Source: Guillardia theta CCMP2712
Taxonomy: Eukaryota; Protista; Cryptophyta
NCBI RefSeq assembly: GCF_000315625.1
Contig: NW_005434592.1
Location: 73,447-137,446 of the forward strand
Direction of reading: 5' to 3'
DNA: 64,000 bases
Shown: positions 1 to 35,100 of the stretch, piece after piece
Layout of the letters: the number at the start of each line of letters is the position of its first letter
How positions within the stretch are numbered: position 1 is the first letter of the stretch
The notes under the pieces: model-generated
What the model was told of the DNA's origin: nothing
Seen by the model: the letters and a program-made list of their open reading frames with translations, nothing else
Database searches by the model: none
Program-made: the position numbers and the translations under genes

Positions 1-1925
1 TGCTCCAGTCCTCCACGTTTCCCGACAGCGACAATATCATCTACTTCTCCCTTCGAGCCAACACGCCGCTCGTATCGGCCCTGCATGTCACACTCAGTGG
101 GCTGACGGGTACGGGCACACCAGACAACAACAACTTGCCGATCACGCTATACAACAGCACATTCAAAATGACGTCTGCTATCTGGACGCAAAAATCTGGG
201 AAACTTGACATGACGATCGACACCGTCACTGGTCTCGACGGCGAGCTCTTCCTCTCCTTCACGTTGAAAAATCCTTCCACGACTCAGGCTGCCGTTGATG
301 TCACGGTAGGATGCATCGACTGCGTGACCTGCGTCGACTGTTCTCAGTCGCCCGTCAGCCTGCAGGGCTCCGTCAACGGCTCGATCCTGGGCGTGCAAGT
401 CCCCAAGACTGACTGCGAGCGGAGGAACGGCTCAGCATGGTTCGGCCCCGACTGCTCTCTGCCGTGCTACGGAGTCGTCCAGGTCCCCCCAGGCGGTCAG
501 GCATGGTGCGAATGTCCTGCCGGCTCTTTCGGCGAAAGTTGCCAAACTCAAGTGGTAGCGGACAAGAATCTCTCGGTAGCCCCGCAGCTCGTGCAGCCGA
601 GCTCAGAGCCGGTACCTGTCAAAGGAGCGGACGGGGATGGGGTGGAGCTTCCTCCCGGAGCCCTCACCTCCTCCATCGTCGTCTCAGTGCAAGTGTACAA
701 GACGGATCCTCCGATCCCCAAGGACCAGAGTGACCTCAAGCCCGTGGGGAAGGTGATGGAGCTGAAGCCCGACGGAGTGACCTTCGCTCAGCCCGTCACC
801 ATCGCCACTGCCATCACCCAGGAAGTCATCGACACGGCGAAAAAAGAAGGAAAGGTGCTGGAGATGCGCTTCCTGGATCGGGACAGCGGCAAGTGGGTGA
901 GCACAGGAGGGGAGGTGAAGTATGACCGCGGAGCTCCGTTCCTGCTCACCAAGAGCTATCACTTCTCTCTGTGGGCAGCGATGAGCGGCAACCCTCCCCC
1001 GACCACAGCGACCAACGCGAGCGAGACGACGGCGATGGCGACAACTGCTGTGCCCTCTACCACCGTCACTCCCGCCAAGTCGTCGGACAAGGTCGGTCTC
1101 ATCGTAGGGTTGGTGGTGGGGCTTTCTTCCCTGCTGTTGATCTCAGTGGCGGTCGGGTACACTGTAGCAACCGTCAAGTCTCGGAACAAACTCTACATGG
1201 CCGGAGCAGAGACGAGGACCGAGGAAGGGGATCAGGTCCGGGAGTTCGTCGCTGGCGCCTCTTCCTCCATGGTTGTGGTGCAAGCTTCGCTTGCTCGAGC
1301 TCTTCCACCTCTGGATGAACCAGGTGCTCCTCTCATGTTTCGCAGTACTCTACGTGACGTGGCTCCGTCGCAAGGACCCTCAGCTCCTGTGGACGCCCCC
1401 ACGCCTCCTTCTCCTCGACCTCCCGCCCCCCCCGACTCGGAGCCTTCCAGTCAAGACGTCCTGCCGGCGGCAGGAATCCCAAGCCAGTCTCGAACTCCGA
1501 GCCCTCCTGTGGAGCCTACTTCCAAATTGGAGCTTCCTCTACAGATCTCGTCGATCGGGCAGCTTGTGTTCGACGACAATGTCCTTCAGGCCAGGAGCCC
1601 CAAGGAGACGCTGGTCAAGAGGCGGACCTCCTCCCGCGCCTCCTCCCGCGGCAGCTTGCCGCTGCTATCAGCCATCGAGCGAGGAGAAGGGGCGGCAAGG
1701 AGGACTGAGTCCCCCAAGGCCTTTGTGCCCCAGAGCTCCTTACAGAGGGAGAACAGTCAGCCAGAAGCAGGAGCCGCGAGTCCCATTGACGTTAACGGGA
1801 TGTTTTCTGGAATGTTCGCTTACCTACAATCTGAGGGTGAGGGTAAGGGGAAGGAGGAGGAGCAGGAGGAGGAGCAGGAAGAGGAGGAGGAGGCGCAGAC
1901 ATCGCATCATTCCATCATCCTCTAA
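1..1925 (+). CDS. 3' part of a large type-I membrane surface protein (EGF-like, ZU5-like domain with HFS motif, S/T stalk, TM, Pro/Ser-rich tail); 5' end lies outside the window
   Basis: Frame is open from nt 3 to the TAA at 1923-1925. Contains Cys-rich WFGPDCSLPC...CECPAGSFGESC, ZU5-like GVELPPGAL...ELKPDGVTFAQPVTI, YHFSLW, and TM VGLIVGLVVGLSSLLLISVAVGY. Nt 1-~1050 is near-identical to the reverse complement of ~33529-34576. Confidence 0.85.
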   Translation, partial: LQSSTFPDSDNIIYFSLRANTPLVSALHVTLSGLTGTGTPDNNNLPITLYNSTFKMTSAIWTQKSGKLDMTIDTVTGLDGELFLSFTLKNPSTTQAAVDVTVGCIDCVTCVDCSQSPVSLQGSVNGSILGVQVPKTDCERRNGSAWFGPDCSLPCYGVVQVPPGGQAWCECPAGSFGESCQTQVVADKNLSVAPQLVQPSSEPVPVKGADGDGVELPPGALTSSIVVSVQVYKTDPPIPKDQSDLKPVGKVMELKPDGVTFAQPVTIATAITQEVIDTAKKEGKVLEMRFLDRDSGKWVSTGGEVKYDRGAPFLLTKSYHFSLWAAMSGNPPPTTATNASETTAMATTAVPSTTVTPAKSSDKVGLIVGLVVGLSSLLLISVAVGYTVATVKSRNKLYMAGAETRTEEGDQVREFVAGASSSMVVVQASLARALPPLDEPGAPLMFRSTLRDVAPSQGPSAPVDAPTPPSPRPPAPPDSEPSSQDVLPAAGIPSQSRTPSPPVEPTSKLELPLQISSIGQLVFDDNVLQARSPKETLVKRRTSSRASSRGSLPLLSAIERGEGAARRTESPKAFVPQSSLQRENSQPEAGAASPIDVNGMFSGMFAYLQSEGEGKGKEEEQEEEQEEEEEAQTSHHSIIL

Positions 1926-2401
1926 AGGAATTCAAGTCGACTGCAGCAGCCTCTGGTTTATTCTTGTACATGAGAGGGCGTTATAGATCCTGATGTTTTA
2001 AGTTTAATTTTACTTGATACAATGAAAGCATGCAAACCGAAGCTTGTTCACCCCAGACAACAAGAAGCAAAGATGAGAGGACAGCAAGACAGAAGCGAGA
2101 GAGCAGCCAGAAAGGGAGGACGTGAGAGCAATCTGGTTCATACAGATAGCCATAAGTTCTTTCCCTCTCTCACAACATCAGATCCTCACCCATAATTATC
2201 TCAGCTCTGTCGCAATATCGAACTCCATCCCTCCGCAATCTCAAGACACAACACTAAAACACAAAAGACGACATCATCAAATCTGCTCTGTGGTCTAATC
2301 CACATAGATACCACACAAACATACTGAATGTTTACCTCTGATCACCTTAATTGCCATCATTTCTCATCACCATCATAATCTTCAGTTTGTTTTCGCATGT
2401 T

Positions 2402-2508
2402 TGCGCTTTCGCGCTTCAAAAATTTGGTTTTGGTCATAGCCTGGCGCCACCACGGAAATCTTTAGTAAAAGGCGAAAGATTTGTACGGCATGACGGCACC
2501 AGTGACTT
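2402..2508 (-). ncRNA. U5: U5 spliceosomal snRNA, copy 1
   Basis: Minus strand reads AAATCTTTCGCCTTTTACTAAAGATTTCCGTGG (invariant U5 loop I and its stem). Outer stem CTGGTGCCGTCA/TGGTGGCGCCAG, Sm site AATTTTTG, 3' hairpin GCGC-GAAA-GCGC. Ends are estimated. Confidence 0.95.
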
Positions 2509-2557
2509 GCTAATCCCCATCCCCGCTCCTGCCCATCCCTGCTTCCCCTCCTATTAC

Positions 2558-2576
2558 CCTGCCCCCGATGGCGGGC
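2558..2576 (-). promoter_or_regulatory. Putative snRNA upstream element (PSE/USE-like) of U5 copy 1
   Basis: GCCCGCCATCGGGGGCAGG starts 68 nt upstream of the inferred U5 5' end; the same 19-mer sits at -68/-69 in the other two copies. Confidence 0.75.
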
Positions 2577-2689
2577 TGCGTACCCTCGACTTCCCTATGC
2601 GCTTCCCGACACACCTTGCTCCCGCGCTCGCCCCCGTCTCCTGCTGTCCATCCGCCTTGCTGCTTCGACGTCAGTCTTCGACGTTAGAC

Positions 2690-3427
2690 TAGCATGACAG
2701 GAGGATGATTTGCCGGCCAGTCTGCTGTTGTTTGCCTATCTGATCGCCAATGAAGCCAACAAGGGCTGAGTGGGGTGCCAGGTAGAGCTCTGTGCTGATT
2801 CGTGACAGATCAAGGAGTGGCGTGTTCCCCTGCAAACCCTGCAGTATCGAGATCTGATCTTTCTGCTGTCAAGTAACGAGGAGACTAATCGGTTTGGAAC
2901 TTGAACGGTTAGAAGCCCACTTCAGACTATCGAACCACATCGTTGATGCTATGAGGGACCCCCTCCTCTTTCATCTATGTGCTCTGAACTACTTATCTCA
3001 GCTAACAACTTGAAGTTTCTTGCATCTTGAAATCATTGCTGTCGGTTACTGTAGGGGGTGTTTACCAACCAGCTCACACTATGTACTGAGTGCGGCTGAA
3101 ACTCAACCCGCTAGTGTTCTCCCCTCTTCTTCTTCTAAACTCTTCTTTCGTATTACCTGTGCTGTTTGGGCCCATTCAATCATCCCCAACGCTCCTTGTG
3201 TCTTCTCCATGTCGTCATATCCTCCACTTGTCTTCAGATATCATCGAAGGATCGAGAGCATGGAGGCATGCGTCGTCAAGCAGCACTCAGCTGATTATGC
3301 GGGGCCAGGCATCTCCAGACTTGCTGTGCTCTTCCGTTGGCATGATACGACCAGGATCGGCTCTGCGGCCTTCACGCCATCGCTCGCGTCCTTGAGTGCG
3401 TGGGGGGAACGTGGGGTGAGATAACAT
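2690..3427 (-). CDS. Possible spliced hypothetical protein gene
   Basis: Protein-like minus-strand stretches (GGYDDMEKTQGALGMIEWAQTAQ; DQISILQGLQGNTPLLDLSRISTELYLAPHSALVGF) with plausible splice sites; no recognisable domain. Confidence 0.25.
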
Positions 3428-3943
3428 GGCATTTTTATCTTTTACTCAAGTGGAATTAACGAACAACAGCAAGCTAGGTAGGGAAATAGAGAAAACAAAT
3501 CCGCCTCAACGAGATATAGGAACAATAGAAGAGGCAGCGACAAAAAAATTTGTGGAAGTTAAAATTCATCTCATTTCACCCCACCCTGTCGAATCTCCAC
3601 ACAGAAAACAGTGAAAAGGACGGGTAGTCCACGCTTTTGCTGTTGTCGGGTGATCCAAGATAGGGCAGGGCAGAAGAGAAGGAGAAGGGGGAGGGCGAAT
3701 GAGTGAGCTGCTGAGCAGCAGAGCTTGAGATGGCAGTGGATGAGCCGCGAATCATGTCAGACAGGCAGCAAGAAGCCTGAGATCCTATCTAGCCATGGTT
3801 ACGAGACACGAGCCCGACAGGAAAAAATGAACCAGTAGATCTTCGATAGCTCTGGATAGATTTGGCGAGGTGGGTTTACAATAGTGGGATCAGCTGCTTT
3901 AGTCTATTTCACACGCCTGAATGATCTTCCTGCAGGAGGCAGG

Positions 3944-6900
3944 ATGCAAGCGCTTCATGGCTTCACGCATTCCGCAGCAGCAGAACCGGGGAGCATGGCG
4001 ATGGAGGAGGAGGAAGTCGAAGAAATGATAGGTGAAAACGAATCTTTGATCAGAATCAAGGCCTTCATCTTCGCGCATGTTATTTGTGTATTGGCATCTT
4101 TCTTCCTACTCTTTAGTGAGATTGGATTCGGGGCATCAGTCTTCAAAGGGCTGATCGGAGGGTATGCGTACAGCACTGCAGCTGCTGCAGTTGGCTTTGC
4201 CGTGTTCGTGGTAATGTACGTCTTTGACTTGAACAGCTCAAGTAACGCGGAAAGATCAAAATGCTGCGATCAGCATGCTTTCCTTGCGGTCAAGAACCTG
4301 CTCATGATGATTGTGCTCGCGTCCGTGCTCATCAGCGCAGTCCTGTCGTTCAAGACCCAACCTCAAGCCCCGTTGCTCACATACGTTGTCGTTGGATCAT
4401 TGTACTTTACCCTCATTCGTCTGCGATTCTTTGGTGAGCCTGCTGATGTGCACGCATGCCAGACACTTGCCTGCACCTGTGCCCTGCCCCTCATGCCCGA
4501 CCTCTTTTGCCTGCGCTGCCTGTGACTTGCAGCTGCGTTGCAGGATCCATGGATGTCATCCTGTTCTTGAACATCCTCTCGAGCATGCTTGTGGCAGCAG
4601 GCGTCATCGGCATTGCCGTCTCTCTCATCTGGTCGGGGATCAACAACTTCTGGTGGGGAAGGGAGACCCAGTTGACGTTCCGGGCAAGGTTGCGAGTCTG
4701 TGTGAAGGAGCAGAGGAGTCAGTACTGCTCTGACTACGGCTTCACCGGGTATCAGTGTCAAGCTGGTTGTACCGAGGATGTTGCTGCTTCTGCTTGCGAT
4801 CCGAGCAAGGCAGAGTGCCTTGCTGCTTTCCTCCTGTGGGCGTCTACATACCTCATATCCGTCTTCATCGTCTTCATTGGCCTCGCCTTCTTCTTGTTTT
4901 CCAGCACGCTCCTCAAGAACCAGAGCAGACAGAAAGTCTTTGGCAAGAGAGCCAAGATGTTTCTCTACACCCTCGGGTTTTTCATCTTCTTGCTGTGGGT
5001 TGCAACCTCCGTCACCTGCGCCTCCATGCAAGTCTCGAGCATCGTCTTCTCTTTTGCCGTCATCGGCATTGCTATGCTCGTTGGGATCGTGGTGGGTGTG
5101 ATCGGGCCAGATGAGATCACTGGCAAGATGACGGCAAACAATGCCTTGAAGGTGATGTGACATGTTCTCGATGGATTTCCTCTCAGTAGTCTCAGTCTCA
5201 TTTCTCCAAATCTTCCATGGCATCATTTTGCTTCCCCAAAATCCTCGCTTCCGCGTCCTTTCTGACTTGTTTCATGTTTTCGCTGTCTTGTGCGGATCGC
5301 AGAGCTTCAGGAGGATGGTAAGAGTTGGCTACTTGCATCGCCATGGGCGCTGAGAACCTTTCAGGCGGCGAGCGACGGAGGGAAAGGGTTTGCAATCCTC
5401 GTGCTTTCTCCCGTCATTCCTTTGTTCCTGATGCTTTCCGTGGTCAATCAAGCCGTAAGGCGAGTCTTCTTCCATCAGGACCCGGCAGCATCAGGGGGAG
5501 GGGCGGGAGCAGCTCTAGGCTTCCCGTCCTCCCTCTTCACAGACAGGTATCGCGCTTTCCTCTTGAAGGCGAGCAAGTGGAACTGGACTGTGATCCTCTC
5601 GTGGGTCACCAAGTGGAGCCTTGCCTACTTCGTGCTGCAGGTAGGGGCAGGAATCTGCGTCACCCTCTTCCTGGCATGGCTCAACATCAAGCTGGCGGGG
5701 CTGAACGTTTTCCTCATCTCCTTCCTCATCCTCGTCATCGGCCTATTTCTCTTCGCCATCCCGGTTGTCCCCGGTGTCCCGGCCTACGTCGCTTGCGGCG
5801 TCCTGATAGCTTCTGCTGGGGAGAGACAGTTCAACTCGTTCGCTCTCGCCTGCCTCCTCGCCATCTTCGTGGCAGCTCTCTGCAAGCAGCTCGCATGCGT
5901 GCTGCAGCAGAAAGTGTTCGGGGAGATGATGGGGAAAAGCGTCAAGATCCGATCAATGGTTGGCATCAACAGCGAGACTATCAAGGCCATCAAGGTCATC
6001 TTGGCGAAGAAAGGGATGTCCGTGGGCAAAGTGATGCTCCTCGTTGGAGGACCGGTGGGCAACTCCTCTTATTCGACCTTGCTCCTGCTCCTGCTCCCTC
6101 CGGGCTCCTCCTCTTGCCTCTCCTGCCTCTGGTGCCTGCTGCCTCCTCCTGCCTCTGCTGTCTCCTGCCTCTTCCTCCTCCCCCTTGTTTTCCTCTTCGG
6201 CGCTAACCACGCCGATACGAGCAGGACTGGCCGACCAGTGTCTTGACAGGCATCCTTCACTGCTCAGTTGTGGAGATGCAGATCGGAACCCTTCCAATCA
6301 TCGTCCCTATCGCATTTACCGTCATGACTGGAGCTGGCATGTACAAGGCAGCAGCAGATCCCAATGGGATCTGGCCATCGCTCAATACCATCTTCCTCCT
6401 CCTCGCCTCCATCGGGCTGATGGGGACGGGAGTCGGGTTCATGCTGTACCTCGCCGACTTCATTGATGCACACCGGGAGGAGATTGAATCGATTCCCGAC
6501 GAGGAGGACGTGAAGGAGTACGACACGCAGATGCAGGAGGTCAAGGATCAAATCGCTCGGCTGTCGCAATGGGAAAGGCTATCGATCATGTCACGCCTCT
6601 CCTGCTATGGCTCCTCCTGATACCCTCTACAGGTCCAAGTCTATCCTCCTCATTTCTGCTGTCCTTGGCATCGTCAGCTTCTGGATTTTCAGCATTGACA
6701 GCAGCGGCTGCTTTGAGGTCCTTCTGCCTTCCTTCCCTCCTCTCTCCCCGCCTCTTCCCCATCTTTTCTTCTCTCCTCCCTTCACCAGAATCTTCTACGT
6801 CCTCCTTCCCCACGTGTCCTCCCCAGTCCCCATCACCACTCCTCTCTTTCCCTCCATCTCCATCTCCATCTCCTCGTCCTCTTACGAGCTTCACCTTGTT

Positions 6901-7552: not shown

Positions 7553-7910
7553 AGCCTTCGGGGGCCTTGCGGCCGGCAGTTTGCTCTTTCGTATTGAAGT
7601 TTTGTAATAAGTTACACGCCACAGTGCCATGATCGGAGTTCAAGTATGGACTGTGACGGTCACTCACTGTCAACTCCGGCCCGGCCCTCAAACAACCAGT
7701 GCCAGTGATCGGACCGAAAAGCCTGTCACGGGGCATGATGTCGGATTTTGAATCATCAGTGAGAGGAGAGCCTCGGAGTTCGTTTGGAGAGTAGCGGGCC
7801 GCCGGCCGCCGGGCCGGCGGAGGCTTGCACTGCAATCAATGTCGCCGGACACTGCCGCAGCGACTGAGTCACCGTGGGCCGACTCGTTACTACGGTACCG
7901 GGTCAAACAC

Positions 7911-8358: not shown

Positions 8359-9761
8359 ATGGTTGAAGATTCGAGGAACAGGAAGGGTTTGAAAGCAGCT
8401 CTCAGCGCTGCCGTCCTGTTGCTGGTGGTTGCGAGCGCAGCATGGCTCCATAGAAGAGATGTCGGGGCCTCCACCTCTCTCTTGCTGAGCAGGGACTATC
8501 CAGGAGGAGACTTGCTGTTCTCGTCAAGCGCGCAACCGACAGGCTCATATGGTCAGTTAGCCGAGCGGCTGCAGCATATCAGCCCTACACTCAAGTATGC
8601 CATCATCCGACATATCTACCCGGAACAGGACGCCAAGGATCTTGAGAGCTACTTCCGGCAGGGAGACATGCAAGCAGAGATCCCCATGGTCCCCCAGCAA
8701 AGAGCGGAGGTTCCTCTAAAAGAGGTAGCTATCCAGCAAGGAGCAGAGGTTCCTCTGAAAGAGGTAGCTATCCCCGTCAAGGAGGTAGCGGTGCCATTGG
8801 AAGAGGTTGAAATGCCCGTGAGCATGTACAAAGGAGAAAGGGCCTCGTTCCAGCAGCCACTCACAGAGGCTCCTCGTGCCAAGACAGTGAATTACCTTCC
8901 TGCGGCTCGCGTCACCAACTTTCCTCAGCAGGGAGGAGTCAACCTTGACTTCGTGATGCCCAAGGCAGCGCAGAGGCAGAGTGTCTTGAGGAGGTACGTC
9001 GTCGAGAGAGCCCCGCAGAGGAACGTCGAGGTCCACATGCAGGAGGTGGCGCAGCCCCGGCTTCCTGTCCGAGAAATCATCATCCGAGAGGTGTCGTTGC
9101 TTGATGTTGCGTTGTTCGCGCGTGCTGATCGGAGCCTTTCAGCACTCGAGGAAGAAGGACGACACTGAAAGGAAGCTCCGGTGATGACCGATGCTCATGT
9201 TTCATCCTCCTAGACTCCGTCTTGATGCCCTGAGAACTCGCACAACACCCTTATCATTGACTCTTCTCACATGGTTGTTGTCGCAGGGTGCTTCAGGGTG
9301 AGATCAATAACGAGCGAGTGGTGGAGGTGAGTTGCGGTAGCCCGGAGCCGCTGCCCTGATCCGATGTGCAGCAAATCCACTACAAGTCGCTGTATGACTA
9401 CATCACGTCCATCGTTAGGAGCATCCGCGTCCTCTCTCGGCCGTCTCCTCCTCTCATCCCTGTCTTCGATCGCCGCCCCCTCGACGCTGCTAAGGGCATC
9501 ATCCGCCGTGTCAGGATCATCCAGAGGGCTGAACCATATCCCTCCACCCCTCCACCCTCTCCTCCTCCTCTTCCTCCCCCTCCCCCTCCCCCTCCCCCTC
9601 CTGTCAACCCTCAACCTTACGAGCCTCCTCCTCCTCCGCCACTTCCCCCTCCTCCGCCCCCGCCCCCTCCTCCTCCACCACCACCTCCACCTCCTGCTCA
9701 AATGGTTGAGCCCTCGAAGCCGGATTTTACAGGAAGGTTCCCTGACCCGGTAGGCGATTGA
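8359..9761 (+). CDS. Hypothetical protein with N-terminal anchor/signal, AEVPLKEVAI repeats and polyproline C-terminal region (spliced)
   Basis: 269-aa ORF with hydrophobic ALSAAVLLLVVASAAWL; downstream exon 9366-9761 is Pro-rich. Confidence 0.6.
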
Positions 9762-14350: not shown

Positions 14351-15121
14351 ATGTCTTTTTGCAAGAGCCAAGTCGATGTTGAAATGGAAGATGTATCCGC
14401 CCCCCCCGGACCTGTTAGCCAGGCATCAATTCAAATGAGTGCTACGCAGGAGCATCAAGGCAGAACCGGGTTGGAGCATACTTTCCCTATCGAGCAACAC
14501 GGCATCTGCATGAGGGGACTGGTTCAGGCGATGAAGCTCGATGCCCAAAAGCAGGAGCAACTTGTCGAGGTCATCGCCTGTGTTCTGGATTGCACTGTTG
14601 CACGGAACGATTCGAATGGAAGGAAGTCGGACCTGGTGGCTTTCGAAGGAAGTCATGCTCCCATCGCAGCCTCTGCATATGTCCGGCGCATCAACAGATA
14701 TGGTGGGTGCAGCCCGTGCTGCTTTGCTGTGGGTTTAATGTACCTCGAACGGTTGAAGAGGAGGAACCACAGTGTATGTTTGAACTCCTGCAACTTCCAG
14801 AGGCTGTACCTGGTGGCAGTGATGACTGCTGCGAAGTTCTTGGACGACTTCTACTACTCCAACAAGCACTGGGCTGAGGTTGGTGGGATCAGCCTGCAGG
14901 AGCTGAACTGCCTCGAGCTCGAGTTTCTGTTCCGGATGGGGTTCGGCCTGAACATCACCCGCGAGGATTACGAGTCTTACTTCACGATGCTCGTTGGTAA
15001 TGGAAGCCCGGCCGCACAGGGTCAGGCAGCAAATGCTCAGGGAAAGAAGGAGGATGGGATGGGCCACAAGGCCCTTTCATGGTGCGATGTGACCAATGCG
15101 ATCACAAGCATGGCCCACTGA
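14351..15121 (+). CDS. Cyclin, PHO80-like / cyclin P(U) family
   Basis: YVRRINRYGGCSPCCFAVGLMYLERL...NFQRLYLVAVMTAAKFLDDFYYSNKHWAEVGGISLQELNCLELEFL is the typical cyclin P/U box. Confidence 0.92.
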   Translation: MSFCKSQVDVEMEDVSAPPGPVSQASIQMSATQEHQGRTGLEHTFPIEQHGICMRGLVQAMKLDAQKQEQLVEVIACVLDCTVARNDSNGRKSDLVAFEGSHAPIAASAYVRRINRYGGCSPCCFAVGLMYLERLKRRNHSVCLNSCNFQRLYLVAVMTAAKFLDDFYYSNKHWAEVGGISLQELNCLELEFLFRMGFGLNITREDYESYFTMLVGNGSPAAQGQAANAQGKKEDGMGHKALSWCDVTNAITSMAH

Positions 15122-15443
15122 AAAGTTGGGCTTGTGAGCACAGCAACGAATGGATCAGACGAACAAATGACCCCAAGGGAATGTTCAACTAAGAGGACCT
15201 CTAACACAGTCTTCTACCTCTGTCACATTACCACAAATTGTACTCGACACTCGACACTTGTCCACCATGATCTTGAAGTGGTAAAGACTTACCACTCTCA
15301 ACCCTCTTCAGCTTCGTAGCCTTCATAATGTATTCTTTTCTTTTTTTTAAGGTTAGGTCATCAATGTATTTCAAAAAGTCAATAAAAAGTTTCATTACTC
15401 ATGAAGATGTCGGGATCTACTCGTCAGTGAACAATTGTGCGTT

Positions 15444-18546: not shown

Positions 18547-20223
18547 CTATCGCTTCTTCTGCTGGGCCTCGTAGTGCTTCCTCCACCCGAAGTAGAATCC
18601 CCCGATGGTGTTGATGATCAGACCTACAGCCTGCATATTCTCCACCTGCATCGTTGTCAGGTTGCAGGGGGGAGGGGGGAAAGTGGGAAGGACTGACGTG
18701 GAAATGAAAGCATTGGGGGGGGGGGAGGGGGGTTGCTGGGGATCAGGCAAGGAGACTCGGGGAGGATTGAGAGAGTATAGATGAGACTAAAGGAGTGAAG
18801 GAGGATAGAATTGAGGATAGAAGGAATTAGAGACGTTTGTGAGTCCGAGGGGAGCCTGAACTGGCTGACCTTAGTTCCGAAGAAAATTATACCCAAGGAG
18901 CTTGACAGAGCCATCTTCATCTGCCCAACCACCTGCTCTTGGGGTGAGAAGGAGCTAACAGAGACGGTCATACCGTAGTCGTGAGGGCCGAGCTGTACTT
19001 GGTGCAGAGGTACTGAGAGAAGCCTGTTGGAGGGAGGAGTGAGCTCGCGGCAGGTAAGGCTGTTCCAACTCACCAAGAGTCGAGCCTGCTGCCGATGATC
19101 CTACAAGTGCGAGCCAGAACCAGTAGCTGCCCCACTTTGGGAACGATACGATCCTGTCTGCGAATGGGAAAGAGCATAGTAAGACATTGACGGGTCAAGG
19201 CTGAGTTGTACCAAGATCCCCCGAAGCGATGATATAAACTGTCAAGATGGGTATGGGAACGATGCTGTTTGCAACCAGAATCTCGTCCGACGATGATCCG
19301 AGCTGATTGCAGAATTTCTTGACGAGGGTGAGGTAGAGCGCGTTAAGGCAGCAGGAAGCCAGGGCCCAGGCGTAGCTCAGCGGCGCGAACTCGAGGTCGT
19401 GCAGTGCTGCGATGACAGCTCCTCCTGCTATCATGGCCACCGCGAACTGAATCTGCAAGGAGGAGTACTGCTTAAGGACCAGCGCCTCCATCACCAGCGT
19501 CACCATCGACGTCAGACGTTTGAGTGCGTTGTACATGGGGACATTGAGGCCTTCCAAGCTCGACACAGCAACGAAGGTGTTGATGGTGGACACAAGGGAT
19601 AGCGGCCACAGTCTGCGTATGATGCCGACGACGTTCCTGGAGGACTTCCTGGTGAGGATCTCTGCCGACATTAGCGCACACCGCTCCAACAGCATCATGA
19701 ATGGTAAGAACTTGAAGCTGAAGCCCGAGACCACCTGCTTGGTAAGGATGGTTGCAGCCACTGAGACGAAGCCATAGAGCAGCGCTGCGAGCAGCGGGAT
19801 CGCAAACTCGAAAGCGCTGGGGAGTGCTTCCTGCCATGGCACCCACGATTCAAACGAGAGGAGTAAGGGAATGACAAAAAATGCTCTTTGATGGAATGTG
19901 AAGGATGGTGTCACAACAGACTAGTAGCAACTACAATGTTGCTGCAGTGCACATACAAGAGTATCTTCCTATCCTGCTCTTGCTCTTGCTCCAACCTCCG
20001 CTCATCCCTCCTGTGATTGTTAGTTCCTCCCCACTTTCATGGTTGCCTCCTGCCTGGTCGAACTTTCATCCTAACCATAGCCACTCCCCTTCTCTTGTGT
20101 CAGGTTTCCCTCCTCCTCCCTCCCTCTCCTTCTCCTCCCTCTCTCCTCCTCCCTCCCTTCCCTGACCCTGCCCCCCCCTCCTCTACTGGGCATGACTCGC
20201 CTGACCTTCAGCTTTGGCGCCAT
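18547..20223 (-). CDS. Nucleotide-sugar transporter (SLC35D/TPT superfamily), multi-exon
   Basis: LNVPMYNALKRLT, AALHDLEF, YAWALASCCLNALYLTLVKK, VVGQMK, and terminal GLIINTIGGFYFGWRK...KKR*. Confidence 0.85.
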
Positions 20224-23660: not shown

Positions 23661-23748
<88 letters not shown>

Positions 23749-23749
23749 T

Positions 23750-23790
<41 letters not shown>

Positions 23791-24686
23791 TGTCCTTGTC
23801 CTCGTCCTTGTCCTCGTCCTTATCCTGGTTCTGGTCCTGGTCCTGACTCTCACTCACAGGGGCAAGGCTATCGCAGGCAGCGAGTGGGAAGAAACGTCAT
23901 CCCTCATTCAAGGGGGGCTCGCCGACATCAACGTCAACGTGCAGGAGAGGTCGCTTGAGGCAGCTCGGGTCTTCCTTGAAACTGCTCCTCCTGAAGTCTC
24001 TTGCTCTAGAGCCCTCCAGCCCCAGCTGACCTCGACCTGCAGGCCTGTCAGCAATTCTCCTCAGCCTCAGCTGAGCAGGTGGTCAAGAAGGGCTTCGCCT
24101 CTCCCAAGACTTCTGCCAAGACGCAGCAGCTTGTCCTCAAGATGATCGAAGCCGATTGCTCCTCCTCCGTGATTCCTGTGCTCGTGTAAGGCCTGCGTCC
24201 TCTTCCTCCCTCCCACCCTTCCTTCACCCTCTCCCTCCTTCCCTTCCCCCCCTCCCTCCTGTCTTTATCCTCCTCCTCTCTCGTTGGCTCTTCCAGCTTG
24301 CTTTCTCTTGCCTGCAAGACCTCGGATCTCTTCCCCTGCGTTCTTCTTCTCCTTCTGCTCAGTGCCAGCGAGTGATTCAATACCTCCAGCACCTGCATGA
24401 CCTGGAAGCATGCGAAGACAGCAGCAGCGTGTGTTGAGACTGCTCTCAAGGCCCTGGAGCTCTTTGGAGCTGAGGTAGACAATGGGAAGGAGGGAGGATG
24501 GAAGGGAGGGGGGCGGAGGAAGGAGGCAGGGAGGAAGGAGGCAGGTGACGGTGGAGCAAGGGTGTTGAAAAGCTCTTGGTGTCCAGGTGATCAATGCAAG
24601 AAATTGTCTTCTCCCGGCTTGCGTGGAGATCTTCGACAGCAACGTTCCTCAGGTTTCTTTCTCCTCTCGATATTATTCTCGTTCTT

Positions 24687-24718
<32 letters not shown>

Positions 24719-24914: not shown

Positions 24915-24965
<51 letters not shown>

Positions 24966-27281: not shown

Positions 27282-27434
27282 GGGGCATCAAGGTGGGGAG
27301 CGTGTCAATACACTCTTAACAAACCGTCAGCAGACTCTCAGCTAATTCTCGAACAAGTCCTTTATGTGTGCCGATCCCAGCGACCTTGTTCCTACTCGGT
27401 ACCTGTCAGCCCCCGTCGTCCTCAACAGCTCTCT

Positions 27435-28783: not shown

Positions 28784-29580
28784 TTCGCCCTTCCCTCCCT
28801 CCTCCCAGTGCTTCCGAGTTGTCGGCACGGTGGGCCCGGGCCCCGGGTCCCGGATGGACCAAGAACTTTTACGACTACCCACCCCTGACTCGTCCCCAAA
28901 TTCTTCCGTACCCCACCCCACATCCCGTTGAGAGCAACTTTGTAAGACCACCCCTCATTTCGACGATCACTGCCCCTAGTAATCCTTTCTTACGCGGGTT
29001 CAAAACCTATCTCTATATTTCAAATAATAGAGGCAAGATTATTCAAACTTGCTTTATGAATAATACACAACCCCTTCCAGCTCCGGATACATGAGGGGTG
29101 GTAGCCACTCCCTCTGATCAAGCACGATTCGTACCTTTTACCACCCCCTGTTTGCAAGGAGATTTCCCCCCCTCTTCACCCCACCCACCCCACCATTGCC
29201 TCCAACAATGACCTCCACAACCCACCTATCCTAGCCATACCCTACCCCCCTTTATAATATAATTCCTTCACCACCCCCTAGGCAATTTCCGTACTCAAAG
29301 AATAGTCGGAAACAGGGGTGAGACATTTTCAGGTGGGTACCTACATCCGCCTCTACCATACTGTTCGATAGGAAAATAGGGGGTAGATCGAATGAACTCG
29401 AGTACCCCTACCCTATCGGTCTGACCCCTACCCTACTCACAAAGATTTTTTGTCAGTACCCCCCAACATTCCGGTGTCTGTTCGTCGCCGCCATGGTAAA
29501 AAGGCTTCTGTGATTGCGAACAATCTCTGTGAACATGGCACAAGCATGTCACTCATTCCACTGTCAGTGATGAAAATTAT

Positions 29581-29667
29581 CATTTCTTGAATGTGTCTTC
29601 ATTCATTCATTTCGTTGAATGTGTTTTCATTCATTCATTTTCTTGAATGTGTCTTCATTCATTCATT
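29581..29667 (+). repeat. ~28-bp tandem repeat, 3 copies
   Basis: Unit approximately CATTTTCTTGAATGTGTCTTCATTCATT. Confidence 0.85.
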
Positions 29668-30095
29668 CCGATCTCCGTCTTGTGCAGTGCGGGTTTGTTG
29701 ATGGTTTGCTTGCAAGTATCTCTATGTCATCCCCTCGCTTCCCATCCCATCGGATGGTAGCGATAGTGCAGCTCCATGTGCAACATATTTTTTTTTATGA
29801 ATGAATCTTGTTGTGTAAACCTGATTTCAACAAACGAATCAACCTTGTCGTCGTCTTCGATCATTCAGTTATGGAGCACTAAGCACAAACTCTTTTAACC
29901 CGAAAACATGCTGGAGTTGATGGTATAATTATCAGGTGTTCTTGCCCCCACTTACAGGAATTGAGGTGATACTTTCGATGTCCTTGCTTTGCATTTATTG
30001 ATAGTCTTTACAGGCTGTTGCATGCGCATCATCTGATGCCTCCACTGCTGCCGCCAGTGCCTCCACCAGTGCCCACACCACCACCTTGTCTCAGG

Positions 30096-31300
30096 TGTGA
30101 AGCTGATACATGACGAGGCTGGAGATCATATCAATCTAACTCCGCTCGTTGATCAGCCGCCAGCTGACTTTGCTTGGCAACGTGGCTACTCCTGGTATCC
30201 TGACACTCCTGGAGCCTACCCTGCAAGCAAGATGACCTGGTCAGAGCGACGTCATCAGGAGAGTTGCTGGCTGCTAATCGTGTTGTTTGCTTTCTAGGTA
30301 CTACAATTCCGGTGGTCTCTACGATCAGATGCATGCTTCTTCGGATGCGTCCACTGTCGCAGCAGGTAGGAGGAGGATGCAGAGAGGGTGTCGGGGCCTT
30401 AGTTTCATTCAACAGGCTCCCTGTCGCAGGCTCACACCACCACCCTGGCCAACCCCAACTCGGTCTGAAACTTGAGCTCTCGGGAGTTGCTGACGTCATG
30501 CAACCCAGGCTGACTTTGTCTGGCAACGGGGGTACGGATGGTACCCTGACACCCCCGGTGCCTACCCGGCGTCCAAGTGGACCTGGTGAGCAGGCTCGTG
30601 GAAGTTTCTGTTGGACCTGCTCAATGGGTGTGCAGGTACTACAACTCCGGTGGTCTCTACGATCAGTCCCACCAGCTCGGAGCCGTGCCCGTGGGTGAGT
30701 CGCCATGAAGTCGTAGGTCATGAGCTGATGTTTGGTCCACCAGATTCCAAGGACGTGAGCTGTGTCAAGCAGGTTCGAATTGATGTCAATGTCTGACCTG
30801 TTCTGAAAGCCTTTTGTTTCCTGTGTCTTGCTTGGATGAGCAGAACAAGCCCACTCCTGCGTCTCCCGGTTAGAGAACTGACAGAACGAAATGTTCACAG
30901 TTTGTTGCCATGCTGATCCTTGTGATGGCCGTATCGATCATGTCACTGCCCGACTTGTCCATGTCTTCAATGTCTGCATTCGTGAAGTTCTGACTGGTCT
31001 TGTTCCACCAGGACACCTTCTTCTCTGCGGCCATGCCTTCATCCTTGGTGCTGCTGAGGCAACGGTTGAGGTGACTTTCCTCTGCTTCATGCCGCCATCG
31101 ACTCATAGAGTTCGCAGGCCATCAAGACCGGAGACGTCTCCAAGTGGGAGGAGAACTTCAAGGGCGCCTCGAATGCGGCGGCCAATGCTGTCAGCCCTGT
31201 CGGCGGGTACATCATGTCCGAGCACCTCGTCAAGGTGATCCCTTTTGTGGTGTGATGGTTGTCCTCTGATGCGCATGCTCCAGACGAACTAGATGCTGGT
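30096..31300 (+). CDS. Multi-exon hypothetical protein with a duplicated Trp/Tyr-rich 36-aa motif
   Basis: Two copies of ADFxWQRGYxWYPDTPGAYPASKxTW/YYNSGGLYDQ, each split by an intron at the same position. Gene ends are unclear. Confidence 0.55.
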
Positions 31301-31487
31301 CGATGTGTGAGGACATCCAGTCTTGCAGGATTGTGAAGAGCAGAATCAGCTGGTTCATACCCTTTCTTTCCTTGCGTTGCTAGTACGAATAAATCAACAA
31401 TCCCTCGAGTCGTCATGGCTGCATCATACAAGAGATGATGATCGTGCTGACCTCACGATCTACAGCTCAAGAACGCAATCAGTTACT

Positions 31488-31575
31488 TCGTGGATTGCTA
31501 CGGAAATCAACATCCATTGTGGATTGCTACGGAATTCAACATACACTGCGGATTGCTACGGAAAGCAACCTACAT
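31488..31575 (+). repeat. 29-bp tandem repeat, 3 copies
   Basis: Core GGATTGCTACGGAA recurs with a 29-nt period. Confidence 0.85.
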
Positions 31576-31697
31576 GTATTCATCGTACGGGAACATAACA
31601 TGCCGCATCGTGTGACATGCGATCAGGTGTCATATCCCACATGTAGACCACAAGATCCTCTTTGCACTGAATCGCCATCGCTCCACAATGTAGTAAT

Positions 31698-31716
31698 GCC
31701 CGCCATCGGGGGCAGG
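31698..31716 (+). promoter_or_regulatory. Putative snRNA upstream element of U5 copy 2
   Basis: GCCCGCCATCGGGGGCAGG at -68. Confidence 0.75.
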
Positions 31717-31765
31717 GTAATAGGAGGGGAAGCAGGGATGGGCAGGAGCGGGGATGAGGATCGGC

Positions 31766-31872
31766 AAGTCACTGGTGCCGTCATGCCGTACAAATCTTTC
31801 GCCTTTTACTAAAGATTTCCGTGGTGGCGCCAGGCTATGACCAAAACCAAATTTTTGAAGCGCGAAAGCGCA
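31766..31872 (+). ncRNA. U5: U5 spliceosomal snRNA, copy 2
   Basis: Loop I GCCTTTTAC at 31801-31809 within the canonical stem; Sm site AATTTTTG; 3' hairpin GCGCGAAAGCGC. Confidence 0.95.
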
Positions 31873-31922
31873 AACATGCGAAAACAAACTGAAGATTATG
31901 AAGGTGCTGAACGGATGATGAC

Positions 31923-31954
<32 letters not shown>

Positions 31955-32180
31955 GATGTGAGGTTAATTCTTATCAGTTGAAAGAAAACTTTCACCCGGC
32001 ACGTTCTGGTGTTGTGTACAAGTTGTTGGTCATGGTGCCGGCTAGTACATGACAAGCGAGTCTTGAGTTGCTGCTTATTCTGTTCCAAGGTATAGTACAG
32101 TGAGCGAGAGAGTAATATACAACATGACATGACGAAGGCTGGGCGTTGCAGAGCACACAATCAGTGATCAGCAAAGGCGG

Positions 32181-35100
32181 CTAGATGGCAACTTCTTGAA
32201 CCGTCTCTCCTTCCTTGTGCTTCTTCTTCTCCCTCTTCTTGTGGCCGTACGCCTTGCGGAGAGAGTTGGACCTCGCTTCGAGCAGCTGCGGAGAGAACTC
32301 AGCGCTGGACAGGCTTGTGACTTCGTCCGAAACTTCGATAGAGGAAGGACGTTCAGCAAGGAGGAGGCGTCGGGAGCTTCGATTCGATAGTCTCCTCCCT
32401 GTCTCCAGCACATGCTTTCTGTGCTCGCTCTTGAGGAATGATTCCATCCAGGCGTCTGAGTCTCTCCTCGACCTCTCTGCCGCCTTCTTGTCCTCTGTCA
32501 CGATCATCTCGTGAAGCTCCTCCGCCCTCTTGCTTTGCCGCTCCTCCGCTCTTCTCCGATTCTTCCCTTGTCCTGCTGTCTTCTCTCTCTCAACGAACCT
32601 GCTATCCCCTGCAGTCCTCGCTCCCTGCTCTCCTCCTCTCGCCTCTCCTGTATGTGACCTTGGCATATCCCCTGCAGTCCTCGCTCCCTGCCCTCCTCCT
32701 CTCGCCTCTCCTGTATGTGACCTTGGCATATCCCCTGCAGTCCTCGCTCCCTGCCCTCCTCCTCTCGCCTCTCCTGTATGTGACCTTGGCATATCCCCTG
32801 CAGTCCTCGCTCCCTGCCCTCCTCCTCTCGCCTCTTCTGCATGTGATCTGGGGATATCACGGACTGCATCATTTTCTTGTTTGGTAGGAGCGTTGCCTGC
32901 TGCTCTTGCCTCTCCTTGGAATGATTCTTCTGCCCCACTTGGTGCTGGTCGGGCAGTTCTGTTCATTTGGTCTTTGAGTTCCCGCGAGAAAGATTCGAAC
33001 TCATCCATGTCCTGAGCGGTCAGGCTGGTGATCGAAGTCTTGATGGAGGCCTTCAGGCTCTCTTCAAGCATGCTTCTCTTCAGTTTCTTCACGTGCTCTA
33101 TCGTCCCTCGCCTGCTTCGCCTGCCCTTGGCTGCTGCCTCCACCTCCATCTCCTTCTCTTTCTTCTCCGACAACTTGATCTCTGTCGGCGCAACCACTTT
33201 TGTCTCCTCCTGTTCTTGCACATCCTGGTATACAAGTTCTGCCGACGCTGCTGCGTCTGGAGCTGCCTCCGCAGTTGAAGGTGACCCTTCCTGCTGCTGA
33301 GGCATTACAGACTCGAAGTACTCCTCAGCGTCTCTCGTCGGACTTGGTACGTTCTGAACTTGCTGAGGCTCCTTGGACGTCTTCTTGCCGTGCCTTGACA
33401 CGGTGTAGTACCATCCCGTTATCGATAAGGCTAGAACCGACGTGACACCGGCGGCGATCCCAATGAACAAGACAACGTTGACGGAGCGAGTCTTCTCGGG
33501 GGGCATGGTGGTAGAGGGAAGGACGACGGCAGTTGTCGCCATCGCCGTCGTCTCGCTCGCGTTGGTCGCTGTGGTCGGGGGAGGGTTGCCGCTCATCGCT
33601 GCCCACAGAGAGAAGTGATAGCTCTTGGTGAGCAGGAACGGAGCTCCGCCGACATACGCCACCTCCCCTCCTGTGCTCATCCACTTGCCGCTGCCCCGAT
33701 CCAGGAAGCGCATCTCCAGCACCTTTCCTTCTTTTTTCGCCGTGTCGATGACTTCCTGGGTGATGGCAGTGGCGATGGTGACGGGCTGAGCGAAGGTCAC
33801 TCCGTCGGGCTTCAGCTCCATCACCTTCCCCACGGGCTTGAGGTCACTCTGTTCCTTGGGGATCGGAGGATCCGCCTTGTACACTTGCACTGAGACGACG
33901 ATGGAGGAGGTGAGGGCTCCGGGAGGAAGCTCCACCCCGTCACCGTCTGCTCCTTTGACAGGTACCGGCTCTGAGCTCGGCTGCACGAGCTGCGGGGCTA
34001 CCGAGAGATTCTTGTCCGCTACCACTTGAGTTTGGCAACTTTCGCCGAAAGAGCCGGCAGGACATTCGCACCATGCCTGACCGCCTGGGGGGACCTGGAC
34101 GACTCCGTAGCACGGCAGAGAGCAGTTGGGGCCGAACCATGCTGAGCCGTTCCTCCGCTCGCAGTCAGTCTTGGGGACTTGCACGCCCAGGATCGAGCCG
34201 TTGACGGAGCCCTGCAGGCTGACGGGCGACTGAGAGCAGTCGACGCAGGTCACGCAGTCGATGCATCCTACCGTGACATCAACGGCAGCCTGAGTCGTGG
34301 AAGGATTTTTCAACGTGAAGGAGAGGAAGAGCTCGCCGTCGAGACCAGTGACGGTGTCGATCGTCATGTCAAGTTTCCCAGATTTTTGCGTCCAGATAGC
34401 AGACGTCATTTTGAATGTGCTGTTGTATAGCGTGATCAGCAAGTTGTTGTTGTCTGGTGTGCCCGTACCCGTCAGCCCACTGAGTGTGACATGCAGGGCC
34501 GATACGAGCGGCGTGTTGGCTCGAAGGGAGAAGTAGATGATATTGTCGCTTTCGGGAAACGTGGAGGACTGGAGCAGTTTGACGTACTCGAACTTAGGAA
34601 AGATGCAGGAAGACGGGCCCTGAGGCTTCTGCTCGCAGGTGAAGGCAGGAGAGCTGGAGAAACGACAGAGAGCTGTTGCCTCTACCTTGCAGCTGCTCGA
34701 GCATCCGTCTCCGTCCAACACGTTCCCGTCATCACAGTCCTCGGTCGGCAACTTCAACCCGTCTCCGCATACTCGCGGGCATTCGGCGTTTGCAAGATCG
34801 AGAGGAGAGGAGGCGACGGCTCCTTCTCCGACGACGTTGATGGCCGACACTTTGAGGGTAAAGTTCTGGGTGGTAGAGTCGAAGAGCTGGGGGTAGTCCT
34901 GTCTCGTGATCAACACGCTTGTCTGCAATGTTGAGATGACAAACTCTTGATTGACCACCAAGACGACGCGAAAGCTGGAGATGAGTTGACGGTTTGCTGT
35001 CCCATCGCCAGTATTAGATGGGATCGTCCAGGTGAAGTTGAGGGTGTTGAGGTCGAAGCGAGAGACGGTGAGAGACTGAGGGACCGTCGGGGTAGTCAAG

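What the first reader, a model, noticed from the sequence alone, without database searches (positions are those of the whole stretch)
1..34576. Inverted receptor paralogs share an almost identical ectodomain but have unrelated TM and cytoplasmic tails
Seen: nt 1-~1050 matches the reverse complement of ~33529-34576 almost base for base. Identity stops abruptly in the S/T stalk (after ...AMATTAV). Beyond that point the TM helices and tails (Pro/Ser-rich with an acidic end vs charged with 21-aa repeats) cannot be aligned by eye. Inference: old paralogs whose ectodomains were recently homogenised or exchanged, so one sensing module is wired to two different intracellular outputs. This resembles paired-receptor or modular surface-protein families.
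Basis: partly seen in the sequence, partly recalled or inferred. Interest (0 to 1): 0.8.

Follow-up and report, generated by a model that had tools for sequence, protein, structure and literature searches.

The report
Algal receptor pair with homogenised ectodomains
Two neighbouring, oppositely oriented genes of the alga Guillardia theta encode giant surface proteins whose outside parts have been copied onto each other (98% identical over about 7.7 kb), while each keeps its own ancient, unrelated inside tail, a pattern well known from paired immune receptors of vertebrates.

Summary
The window is Guillardia theta scaffold JH993046.1. The 1,051-nt inverted match (16 mismatches) is the end of an inverted repeat of about 7.7 kb. 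It covers the whole ectodomain of two convergent genes: copy A (model P0001) and copy B (GUITHDRAFT_115195, 3,076 aa).

- **Identity profile:** 98.0% over 6.3 kb, introns included. It decays at both ends, through the signal-peptide region and through the stalk and TM. Promoters and cytoplasmic tails are unalignable.
- **Decisive test:** the sister genus Hanusia phi has both tail types. P0004 joins an ectodomain to an A-type tail. P0033 joins the stalk to a B-type tail (E 1e-52).
- **Close relative:** metagenome contig L002 carries an A-type tail, yet its ectodomain lies outside the A+B pair (dS 0.14 against 0.03).
- **Conclusion:** tails group by type and ectodomains by species, so these are old paralogs with gene conversion limited to the ectodomain.

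Corrections:
- The TM helices are weakly homologous.
- Copy A carries a frameshifting 25-nt duplication in the reference.
- "Sensing" and two outputs remain untested.
- Read evidence could not be obtained.

This is a new member of a known kind (merohomogenisation of paired receptors).

The parts
1..1051 (+). Window-visible end of the copy A arm of the inverted repeat. The arm continues about 6.65 kb to the left of the window, to about L001:8620.
   Evidence: 98.5% identical to the reverse complement of 33526-34576. Leftward extension shown.
1..1925 (+). 3' part of the copy A gene (model P0001, 2,348 aa, L001:10001-17199). Stop codon at 1923-1925.
414..542 (+). Cys-rich EGF-like stretch in the shared membrane-proximal module. 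It is modelled with low confidence.
   Evidence: Translation. pLDDT is below 50 for model residues 132-168.
540..1000 (+). Juxtamembrane beta-sandwich with a ZU5/GAIN-like fold. An HFS motif lies at 960-968 (copy B: 33617-33609).
   Evidence: AlphaFold model: mean pLDDT 73 overall, and 10-residue block means of 70-95 for residues 181-330. Foldseek hits to ankyrin ZU5 (TM by target about 0.6, E 2e-4) and to BAI3, CD97 and CELSR1 GAIN domains. Motif coordinates.
1052..1160 (+). Copy A stalk end and TM helix (TM 1092-1160). This is the zone of old, residual homology to copy B.
1161..1922 (+). A-type cytoplasmic tail: Pro/Ser-rich, with an acidic end and C-terminal ...HHSIIL. Blocks conserved with Hanusia P0004 are KLYMA, ELPLxIS..G..V.D, RR..SSRGSLP.LS and the C-terminal SI[IV][IL].
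   Evidence: BLASTP against the P0004 tail gives E 4e-10 and 5e-9. L002 carries the same tail type, 275 of 311 nt.
32181..41563 (-). Copy B gene, GUITHDRAFT_115195 / XP_005825629.1 (P0002, 3,076 aa). Exons 41563-35924, 35870-35748, 35698-35617 and 35566-32181.
   Evidence: The rebuilt CDS translates exactly to P0002. Name and accession. Intron 1 read directly.
33526..39811 (-). Main homogenised block of the copy B arm: repeated beta-sandwich modules, FN3-like domains, DUF4215, EGF-like stretch, ZU5/GAIN-like domain and three short introns.
   Evidence: 98.03% identical to L001:10037-16325. The three introns total 152 nt with a single mismatch. Pfam DUF4215 scores 34 bits against a cut-off of 27; fn3 scores 20.6, below its cut-off of 25.
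39812..40864 (-). Ser/Thr-rich mucin-like region of copy B. It is not homogenised and its repeat content differs from copy A (1,053 nt against 805 nt).
40865..41476 (-). 5' homogenised block of copy B (first domain). Identity falls towards the signal peptide (100% to 72%), and there is no similarity upstream of the ATG.
33405..33525 (-). Copy B stalk end and TM helix (TM 33476-33405).
32184..33404 (-). B-type cytoplasmic tail (charged). The core KGRRSRRGTIE...DMDEFESFSREL (33128-32976) is conserved with Hanusia P0033. The four 21-aa repeats (63-nt array, 32603-32858) lie where the P0033 alignment becomes weak.
   Evidence: BLASTP against P0033: 45% over 270 aa, E 1e-52. Alignment A2. Tandem repeat.

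Best explanation
Copy A and copy B are ancient paralogs of one giant type I surface glycoprotein. The architecture is signal peptide, Ser/Thr mucin region, about 1,200 aa of repeated beta-sandwich modules, FN3-like domains, DUF4215, an EGF-like stretch, a ZU5/GAIN-like juxtamembrane domain with an HFS motif, a stalk, one TM helix and a disordered tail.

The two genes lie tail to tail, about 30 kb apart, on G. theta scaffold JH993046.1. Their A-type and B-type TM and tail modules separated before Guillardia and Hanusia diverged. In the G. theta lineage the DNA encoding the whole ectodomain, introns included, was overwritten between the loci by non-reciprocal recombination between the inverted copies (interlocus gene conversion). 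The uneven divergence suggests this happened more than once. The last event came after the split from the close relative represented by L002.

Conversion tracts die out where old divergence is too high: in the signal-peptide region and 5' flank, in the repeat-unstable mucin region, and in the stalk just before the TM helix. The tails therefore escape.

Shown: the sequence relationships. Inferred: the mechanism (conversion), and the consequence that one ectodomain is presented with two different, separately conserved cytoplasmic tails.
For: - **Extent of the repeat:** 6.3 kb at 98.03% plus 0.6 kb at 92.5%. The three introns are near-identical, which excludes a retrocopy.
- **Tails group by type across genera:** both hits are Hanusia phi proteins. 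G. theta tail A matches the tail of P0004 (E 4e-10 and 5e-9). G. theta tail B matches P0033 (E 1e-52). Cross-type comparisons align only the TM helix.
- **Ectodomains group by species:**
  - Amino-acid identity over 660 residues is 95.2% for GtA-GtB, 88.2% and 87.1% for each against L002, and about 67% against Hanusia.
  - The four-taxon split (GtA,GtB)|(L002,HpA) has 92/99 support.
  - Site patterns are A=B 249, A=C 64 and B=C 40.
  - dS is 0.029 for A-B against 0.138 for A-C and 0.132 for B-C.
  - L002 nevertheless carries the A-type TM and tail.
- **Old divergence at both edges of the tract:**
  - The 5' identity gradient runs 72, 77, 85, 90 and 100% in successive 60-nt steps, with unrelated upstream DNA.
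  - At the 3' end, L002 shares with B a 6-nt GTCGTC segment and the SVNV codons that A has lost. B's stalk and TM are therefore homologous to the ancestral A-type sequence.
- **Uneven divergence:** mismatches are overdispersed along the tract (dispersion about 2, p about 0.001). This fits tracts of different ages.
- **Selection:** lineage dN/dS is about 0.5 in both copies.
Against: - The ectodomain of the Hanusia B-type gene is unknown. P0033 starts only 16 residues before the types diverge. The 'ectodomains by species' tree therefore rests on G. theta A and B, L002 (A-type) and Hanusia A-type only.
- No read-level confirmation of the assembly or of expression in G. theta was possible.
- The direction and number of conversion events are unresolved. 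dS in the A tail against L002 (0.216, 96 codons) is not clearly different from the ectodomain value of 0.138.
- Clustered differences can also come from complex mutations. One example is the A-specific cluster at window 918-927, where B, L002 and Hanusia agree.
- Copy A's frame is broken upstream in the reference, so the pair may not be a functional pair in this strain.
Confidence: 0.85

Rival explanations
1. A single recent partial duplication. The ectodomain-coding DNA of one gene was copied in inverted orientation and landed in frame upstream of an unrelated TM and tail sequence. This would be exon-shuffling-like tail capture with no older paralogy.
For: The drop in identity at window 1051 is sharp at first sight. 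The cytoplasmic tails show no similarity.
Against: The B-type stalk, TM and tail, already joined to the end of the same ectodomain (MSGNPPP.T.TNAS.T), exist in Hanusia phi. Stalk, TM and signal-peptide regions of A and B are homologous at an old level of divergence. A non-homologous breakpoint predicts no such zones.
Confidence: 0.04
2. The ancestral gene had two alternative 3' terminal exons (A and B tails) used by alternative splicing. On this reading the Hanusia P0004 and P0033 proteins are isoforms of one gene. G. theta then duplicated the whole gene recently, and each copy lost one tail exon.
For: Both Hanusia sequences come from a predicted proteome, and papers describe Hanusia data as transcriptomic, so linkage to separate genes is not shown. 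The similarity of the two stalk and TM segments would fit tandemly duplicated exons.
Against: In G. theta both tails are read continuously from the ectodomain exon without an intron. The 5' ends (signal peptide, first 250 nt) of A and B are only 72-85% identical and the promoters are unrelated. A recent whole-gene duplication with dS 0.03 cannot give that. The two Hanusia sequences already differ at 3 of the first 16 stalk residues, where G. theta A and B are identical.
Confidence: 0.05
3. Assembly artefact: one arm or one junction is a mis-join or an artificial duplication in the draft assembly.
For: The reference is a draft scaffold assembly. Read laying failed, so there is no read-level check.
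Against: The arms differ at more than 115 positions plus indels. They sit in unique flanks without Ns in one scaffold. The A-type junction is reproduced in an independent metagenome contig (L002) and in Hanusia P0004. The B-type junction is reproduced in Hanusia P0033. Runs from 12 studies hold part of the copy B stretch, 7 runs more than half of its words.
Confidence: 0.03
4. The ectodomains are similar only because of extreme purifying selection, without any sequence exchange.
For: None specific.
Against: Synonymous divergence is also low (dS 0.03 against 0.13-0.14 to the close relative) and the introns are near-identical. dN/dS is about 0.5, so constraint is relaxed, not extreme.
Confidence: 0.01

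Closest known systems
Merohomogenisation of paired opposing leukocyte receptors (KLRC/NKG2, KLRI, KLRB, KLRA/Ly49, PIR; Fossum et al. 2011, PMC3210942)
   Same: Paralogs keep different signalling parts that are conserved across species. Post-speciation gene homogenisation is restricted to the part encoding the extracellular ligand-binding domain, so ectodomains group by species and tails by type.
   Different: Those are small vertebrate immune receptors with known opposite signalling and known ligands. Here the proteins are about 3,000-aa mucin/adhesin-like proteins of a unicellular cryptophyte. Ligand and tail function are unknown, and only one outgroup genus is available.
[quoted passage not shown] 2017, PMC5701461)
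   Same: The extracellular region is extremely similar through repeated conversion. Constraint on the converted exons is relaxed (dN/dS is about 0.5 here). One partner can be a non-functional allele that still takes part in conversion, which parallels copy A's frameshift.
   Different: Expression in the same cells and shared binding preference were shown for the Siglecs. Nothing of that kind is known here.
Large inverted repeats (palindromes) whose arms are kept alike by arm-to-arm gene conversion, as on primate sex chromosomes (from general knowledge, not checked in a paper here)
   Same: Inverted arms of several kb with a unique spacer (32.5 kb here). Arm-to-arm identity is higher than identity to the ortholog in a close relative.
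   Different: The arms here coincide with one functional module of a gene (the ectodomain) and end inside the coding sequence. Arm identity of 98% is lower than in classical palindromes.
Adhesion-type surface proteins with an autoproteolytic juxtamembrane domain (GAIN of adhesion GPCRs; ZU5 of UNC5CL and PIDD, which cleave at HFS, from general knowledge)
   Same: The last extracellular domain has a ZU5/GAIN-like beta-sandwich fold. An HFS motif sits just before its last strand, about 28 codons upstream of the conversion boundary.
   Different: No Pfam ZU5 or GPS hit. The protein has a single TM helix, not seven. ZU5 domains of animals are cytoplasmic. Cleavage is untested.

Membership tests
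Paired receptors with ectodomain-restricted homogenisation (merohomogenisation) | Two paralogous genes with near-identical extracellular parts | tested here: met
   98.0% nt over 6.3 kb; 95.2% aa over the last 660 ectodomain residues.
Paired receptors with ectodomain-restricted homogenisation (merohomogenisation) | Different TM and cytoplasmic parts, each conserved as its own lineage in other species | tested here: met
   The A tail matches Hanusia P0004 and L002. The B tail matches Hanusia P0033. Cross-type comparisons align only the TM helix.
Paired receptors with ectodomain-restricted homogenisation (merohomogenisation) | Ectodomains group by species, against the tail relationships (post-speciation homogenisation) | tested here: met
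   (GtA,GtB)|(L002,HpA) with 92/99 support; dS 0.029 against 0.13-0.14. Limitation: no B-type ectodomain from another species is available.
Paired receptors with ectodomain-restricted homogenisation (merohomogenisation) | Partners bind the same ligand and give different (opposing) signals in the same cell | not testable with these tools
   No ligand, signalling or expression data.
DUF4215 (PF13948) Cys-rich repeat proteins | Pfam match above the gathering score | tested here: met
   34 bits against a cut-off of 27, E 3.5e-8, copy B residues 364-398 of the 1,232-aa ORF.
Fibronectin type III domain proteins | Pfam fn3 match above the gathering score | tested here: inconclusive
   20.6 bits against a cut-off of 25. 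UniRef names copy B 'Fibronectin type-III domain-containing protein'.
ZU5 / GAIN-type autoproteolytic juxtamembrane domains | ZU5- or GAIN-like fold | tested here: met
   Foldseek against ankyrin ZU5 chains 3kbt and 3f59 (TM by target 0.59-0.64, probability 1.00). Also BAI3, BAI2, CD97 and CELSR1 GAIN domains, on a model whose 10-residue block pLDDT means are 70-95 for residues 181-330.
ZU5 / GAIN-type autoproteolytic juxtamembrane domains | Sequence-profile membership (Pfam ZU5 or GPS) | tested here: not met
   No such Pfam hit at E up to 0.1.
ZU5 / GAIN-type autoproteolytic juxtamembrane domains | Self-cleavage at the HFS (or HL/T) motif | not testable with these tools
   The HFS motif is present in A, B, L002 and Hanusia P0004. 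Cleavage needs an experiment.

The most novel reading that the evidence does not exclude
A genuine paired-receptor system in a free-living unicellular alga. Selection, not mere proximity, would keep the ligand-binding ectodomain of two genes in step by repeated conversion. Two cytoplasmic tails at least as old as the Guillardia-Hanusia split would deliver different outputs, possibly after self-cleavage of the ZU5/GAIN-like domain at HFS. The logic known from vertebrate immune receptors would then have arisen independently in a protist.
Probability: 0.2. Interest if true: 0.7.

Novelty: new member of a known kind. Interest (0 to 1): 0.42.

Why it matters
Conversion confined to the extracellular part of paralogous receptors, with the signalling tails preserved, is established for vertebrate immune receptors. 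My paper searches found no description of it for a free-living alga.

Here the pattern is unusually clean:
- An 8-kb tract matches the ectodomain almost exactly.
- Both tail types are documented in a sister genus.
- An outgroup contig dates the last exchange.

The locus gives a concrete place to ask whether such homogenisation is selected or a by-product of inverted proximity. It also points to two conserved but uncharacterised tail motifs and to a ZU5/GAIN-like juxtamembrane domain in cryptophyte surface biology. For genome annotation, it shows that the copy A model (P0001) is 5'-truncated because of a frameshift in the mucin repeats.

Tried and rejected
- **Read evidence:** I also sent none from the near-identical repeat copies at about 2341-2576 and 44064-44208. 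That dispersed repeat was therefore not searched elsewhere.
- **Tail B alone** against the 5.8-billion protein set: no hit in the 246-784 aa length range.
- **Hanusia membrane-proximal module** (P0004:440-800) used to look for a second Hanusia ectodomain: no hit.
- **Two metagenome scans**, one with tail B motifs and one with the shared module: nothing confirmed.
- **Contig look-ups** for P0004 and P0033: not on record as contigs.
- **Literature:** no paper mentions GUITHDRAFT_115195. None was found on gene conversion of surface proteins in Guillardia.
- **Rooting the ectodomain tree** with distant homologs (P0041, P0087, P0046): very long branches. Only the unrooted four-taxon split is used.
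- **Direction of conversion** (A to B or B to A) from dS in the tail against the ectodomain: not resolvable.
- **A frameshifted relationship between the two tails:** rejected, since tblastn finds no match in any frame.
- **Pseudogene-like relaxation specific to copy A:** not seen. Synonymous/non-synonymous counts are 18/27 in A against 25/40 in B.

Full report
**Source and genes**

The window lies on Guillardia theta CCMP2712 scaffold JH993046.1 (GCA_000315625.1). This was identified through the gene model P0001 and its contig. Window position 1 equals position 15275 of locus L001, which supplies 15.3 kb to the left of the window.

- **Copy A (+ strand):** it ends at window 1925. Its public model (P0001, 2,348 aa) has four exons.
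- **Copy B (- strand):** window 41563-32181. It is GUITHDRAFT_115195 / XP_005825629.1 (P0002, 3,076 aa). My rebuilt four-exon CDS reproduces P0002 exactly.
- The genes are convergent, and 32,474 nt lie between the repeat arms.

**Observation**

Window 1-1051 against the reverse complement of 33526-34576 has 16 mismatches and no gaps. This is only the end of the repeat.

- L001:10037-16325 aligns to window 39811-33526 at 98.03% (6,292 columns, 115 mismatches, 3 gaps).
- L001:8656-9231 aligns to window 41440-40865 at 92.5%.
- Between these blocks lies the Ser/Thr-rich mucin region. It is 805 nt in A and 1,053 nt in B, and the two hold different tandem arrays.
- Upstream of the start codons nothing aligns.
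- Identity rises through the signal-peptide region and first domain in 60-nt steps of 72, 77, 85, 90 and 100%.

The repeat therefore matches the ectodomain-coding part of the gene almost exactly. Its three short introns total 152 nt with a single mismatch. The copying was at the DNA level, not through mRNA.

**The 3' boundary**

After ...AMATTAV, copy A lacks 6 nt that copy B has. About 90 nt of intermediate similarity follow, then a weakly similar TM helix, and then nothing.

- BLASTP aligns the stalk and TM of A and B at 15/38 residues (E 3e-5).
- The cytoplasmic tails show no similarity as proteins or in any frame.

**Outgroups: the decisive evidence**

*L002.* This is an independent ENA metagenome contig of 6,686 nt.
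- It is 94.4% identical to A over its full length, including about 305 nt of the A-type TM and tail.
- It aligns to B (94.5%) only up to the stalk.
- Its spliced ORF is intact at 2,159 codons.
- In the shared 6.3 kb, A and B agree against L002 at 249 sites. A and L002 agree at 64 sites, and B and L002 at 40.
- For exon 4, dS is 0.029 (A-B), 0.138 (A-L002) and 0.132 (B-L002).
- In the stalk, L002 shares with B the 6-nt segment and the SVNV codons. B's stalk and TM are therefore homologous to the ancestral A-type sequence (BLASTP 32/51, E 9e-16, partly inflated by the shared residues).

*Hanusia phi.* An exhaustive profile-free search with the last 1,200 residues of copy B found two proteins that both come from Hanusia phi (EukProt EP00960). 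Hanusia is in the same family, Geminigeraceae. PMC5619915 describes it as a relative of G. theta with transcriptome data.
- P0004 (1,118 aa) has the ectodomain, about 67% identical to both G. theta copies, joined to an A-type TM and tail (E 5e-9 and 4e-10).
- P0033 (293 aa) starts with the last residues of the ectodomain (MSGNPPP.T.TNAS.T) and continues into a B-type TM and tail. It is 45% identical over 270 aa (E 1e-52), with a strongly conserved core KGRRSRRGTIE...DMDEFESFSREL.
- Cross-type comparisons align only the TM helix.

The two tail types are therefore older than the Guillardia-Hanusia split, while the G. theta ectodomains are each other's closest relatives. The four-taxon split (GtA,GtB)|(L002,HpA) has 92/99 support.

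**Mechanism**

The simplest account is old whole-gene paralogs with interlocus gene conversion between the inverted copies. It explains each of these points:
- tails that group by type and ectodomains that group by species;
- near-identical introns;
- old-level divergence at both edges of the tract;
- escape of the repeat-unstable mucin region;
- uneven divergence along the tract (dispersion about 2, p about 0.001; dS per 1,050-nt block 0.012-0.065).

Whether there was one long event plus later mutation or several events is not settled. The direction is not resolved either.

The alternatives fare as follows.
- A recent partial duplication with capture of an unrelated tail is contradicted by P0033 and by the residual homology at both ends.
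- A recent whole-gene duplication of a gene with alternative tail exons is contradicted by the old divergence at the 5' end and by the intron-less ectodomain-tail junctions.
- A misassembly is unlikely. The arms differ at more than 115 sites, and both junction types are reproduced in independent data.

**What the proteins are**

Pfam gives only DUF4215 (above its cut-off) and a sub-threshold fn3 match. The large N-terminal part has no relatives beyond the pair at the sensitivity used.

The shared 349 residues in the window were modelled from alignment A1 (mean pLDDT 73).
- They form a beta-sandwich related to the N-terminal repeat modules.
- A poorly modelled Cys-rich EGF-like stretch follows.
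- The last domain is a confident C-terminal beta-sandwich. Foldseek matches it to ankyrin ZU5 and adhesion-GPCR GAIN domains.
- An HFS motif (window 960-968) precedes its last strand, and the conversion boundary lies about 28 codons further on.

Self-cleavage remains untested. The overall build is that of a giant mucin/adhesin-like type I protein. 'Receptor' and 'sensing module' are interpretations.

**Selection**

dN/dS is about 0.5 between the copies (44 synonymous and 70 non-synonymous differences in 2,042 codons). It is similar on both lineages, with synonymous/non-synonymous counts of 18/27 in A and 25/40 in B. This relaxed constraint resembles what was reported for the converted exons of Siglec-11/16 (PMC5701461).

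**A complication**

In the reference, copy A has a perfect 25-nt tandem duplication in its 57-nt mucin repeat array (L001 about 9701-9750).
- It shifts the frame between the signal-peptide ORF (L001:8491-9957) and the main ORF.
- This is why the public model starts at an internal ATG without a signal peptide.
- It may be real, in which case copy A is recently disabled or polymorphic. It may instead be an assembly error in tandem repeats. I could not test this.

**Limits**

Assembly and expression in G. theta therefore rest on indirect evidence. Runs from 12 studies hold part of the copy B stretch, and none is on record as RNA.
- The Hanusia B-type ectodomain was not found.

**Comparison with known systems and verdict**

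The evolutionary pattern is the one named merohomogenisation for paired opposing leukocyte receptors (PMC3210942). The same pattern is documented for Siglec-11/16 (PMC5701461) and CEACAMs (PMC2832619, listed). The sequence-level criteria of that pattern are met. The functional criteria (shared ligand, different signals, co-expression) cannot be tested here.

The finding is real and well explained. It is a new member of a known kind, in an unusual organism and protein family. One note on another piece of this genome (s1-439822) describes a C-terminal module swap in related proteins, which I did not test.

Noticed in passing
L001:9694-9751 (about 5.5 kb left of window position 1): A perfect 25-nt tandem duplication inside the 57-nt mucin repeat array of copy A shifts the reading frame. 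The public model P0001 therefore starts at an internal ATG and lacks the signal peptide that is encoded upstream (ORF L001:8491-9957).
   Followed up: partly
window 2341-2576 (+), 31698-31934 (-), 44064-44208 (-): A dispersed repeat of 145-237 nt (94-99% identical), preceded by His-codon (CAT/CAC) runs. It lies 3' of both receptor genes in the same relative orientation, and a third copy lies 2.5 kb upstream of copy B. Part of it (31787-31826) tripped the reads filter, so it was not searched elsewhere.
   Followed up: no
window 52720-58918: A young full-length Ty3/gypsy chromovirus-type LTR retrotransposon. Its 300-nt LTRs are 99% identical (52720-53019 and 58619-58918). An intact 1,682-aa gag-pol ORF (53464-58512) carries protease, RT, RNase H, integrase and chromodomain.
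   Followed up: partly
window 32603-32858 (-): A 63-nt tandem array of 4.1 copies (96% matches) encodes the 21-aa repeats of tail B. It lies where the alignment to the Hanusia B-type tail (P0033) becomes weak, so it may be a recent expansion.
   Followed up: partly
window 960-968 and 33609-33617: An HFS motif before the last strand of a ZU5/GAIN-like juxtamembrane domain. It is conserved in A, B, L002 and Hanusia P0004, and is a candidate self-cleavage site.
   Followed up: partly
window 14351-15121 (+) and 19195-19914 (-): The spacer between the arms holds ordinary genes: a cyclin (PF08613, E 1e-31) and a fragment of a triose-phosphate-transporter-family protein (PF03151).
   Followed up: no
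window 59930-60339: A long array of 12-nt (and some 9-nt) units. It shares a 79% inverted match with 23710-23845.
   Followed up: no
window 918-927: A cluster of four A-specific changes within 10 nt (KYDRG in A against AYVGG in B and L002, and AYING in Hanusia). This looks like a complex mutation or a micro-conversion from an unknown donor.
   Followed up: partly
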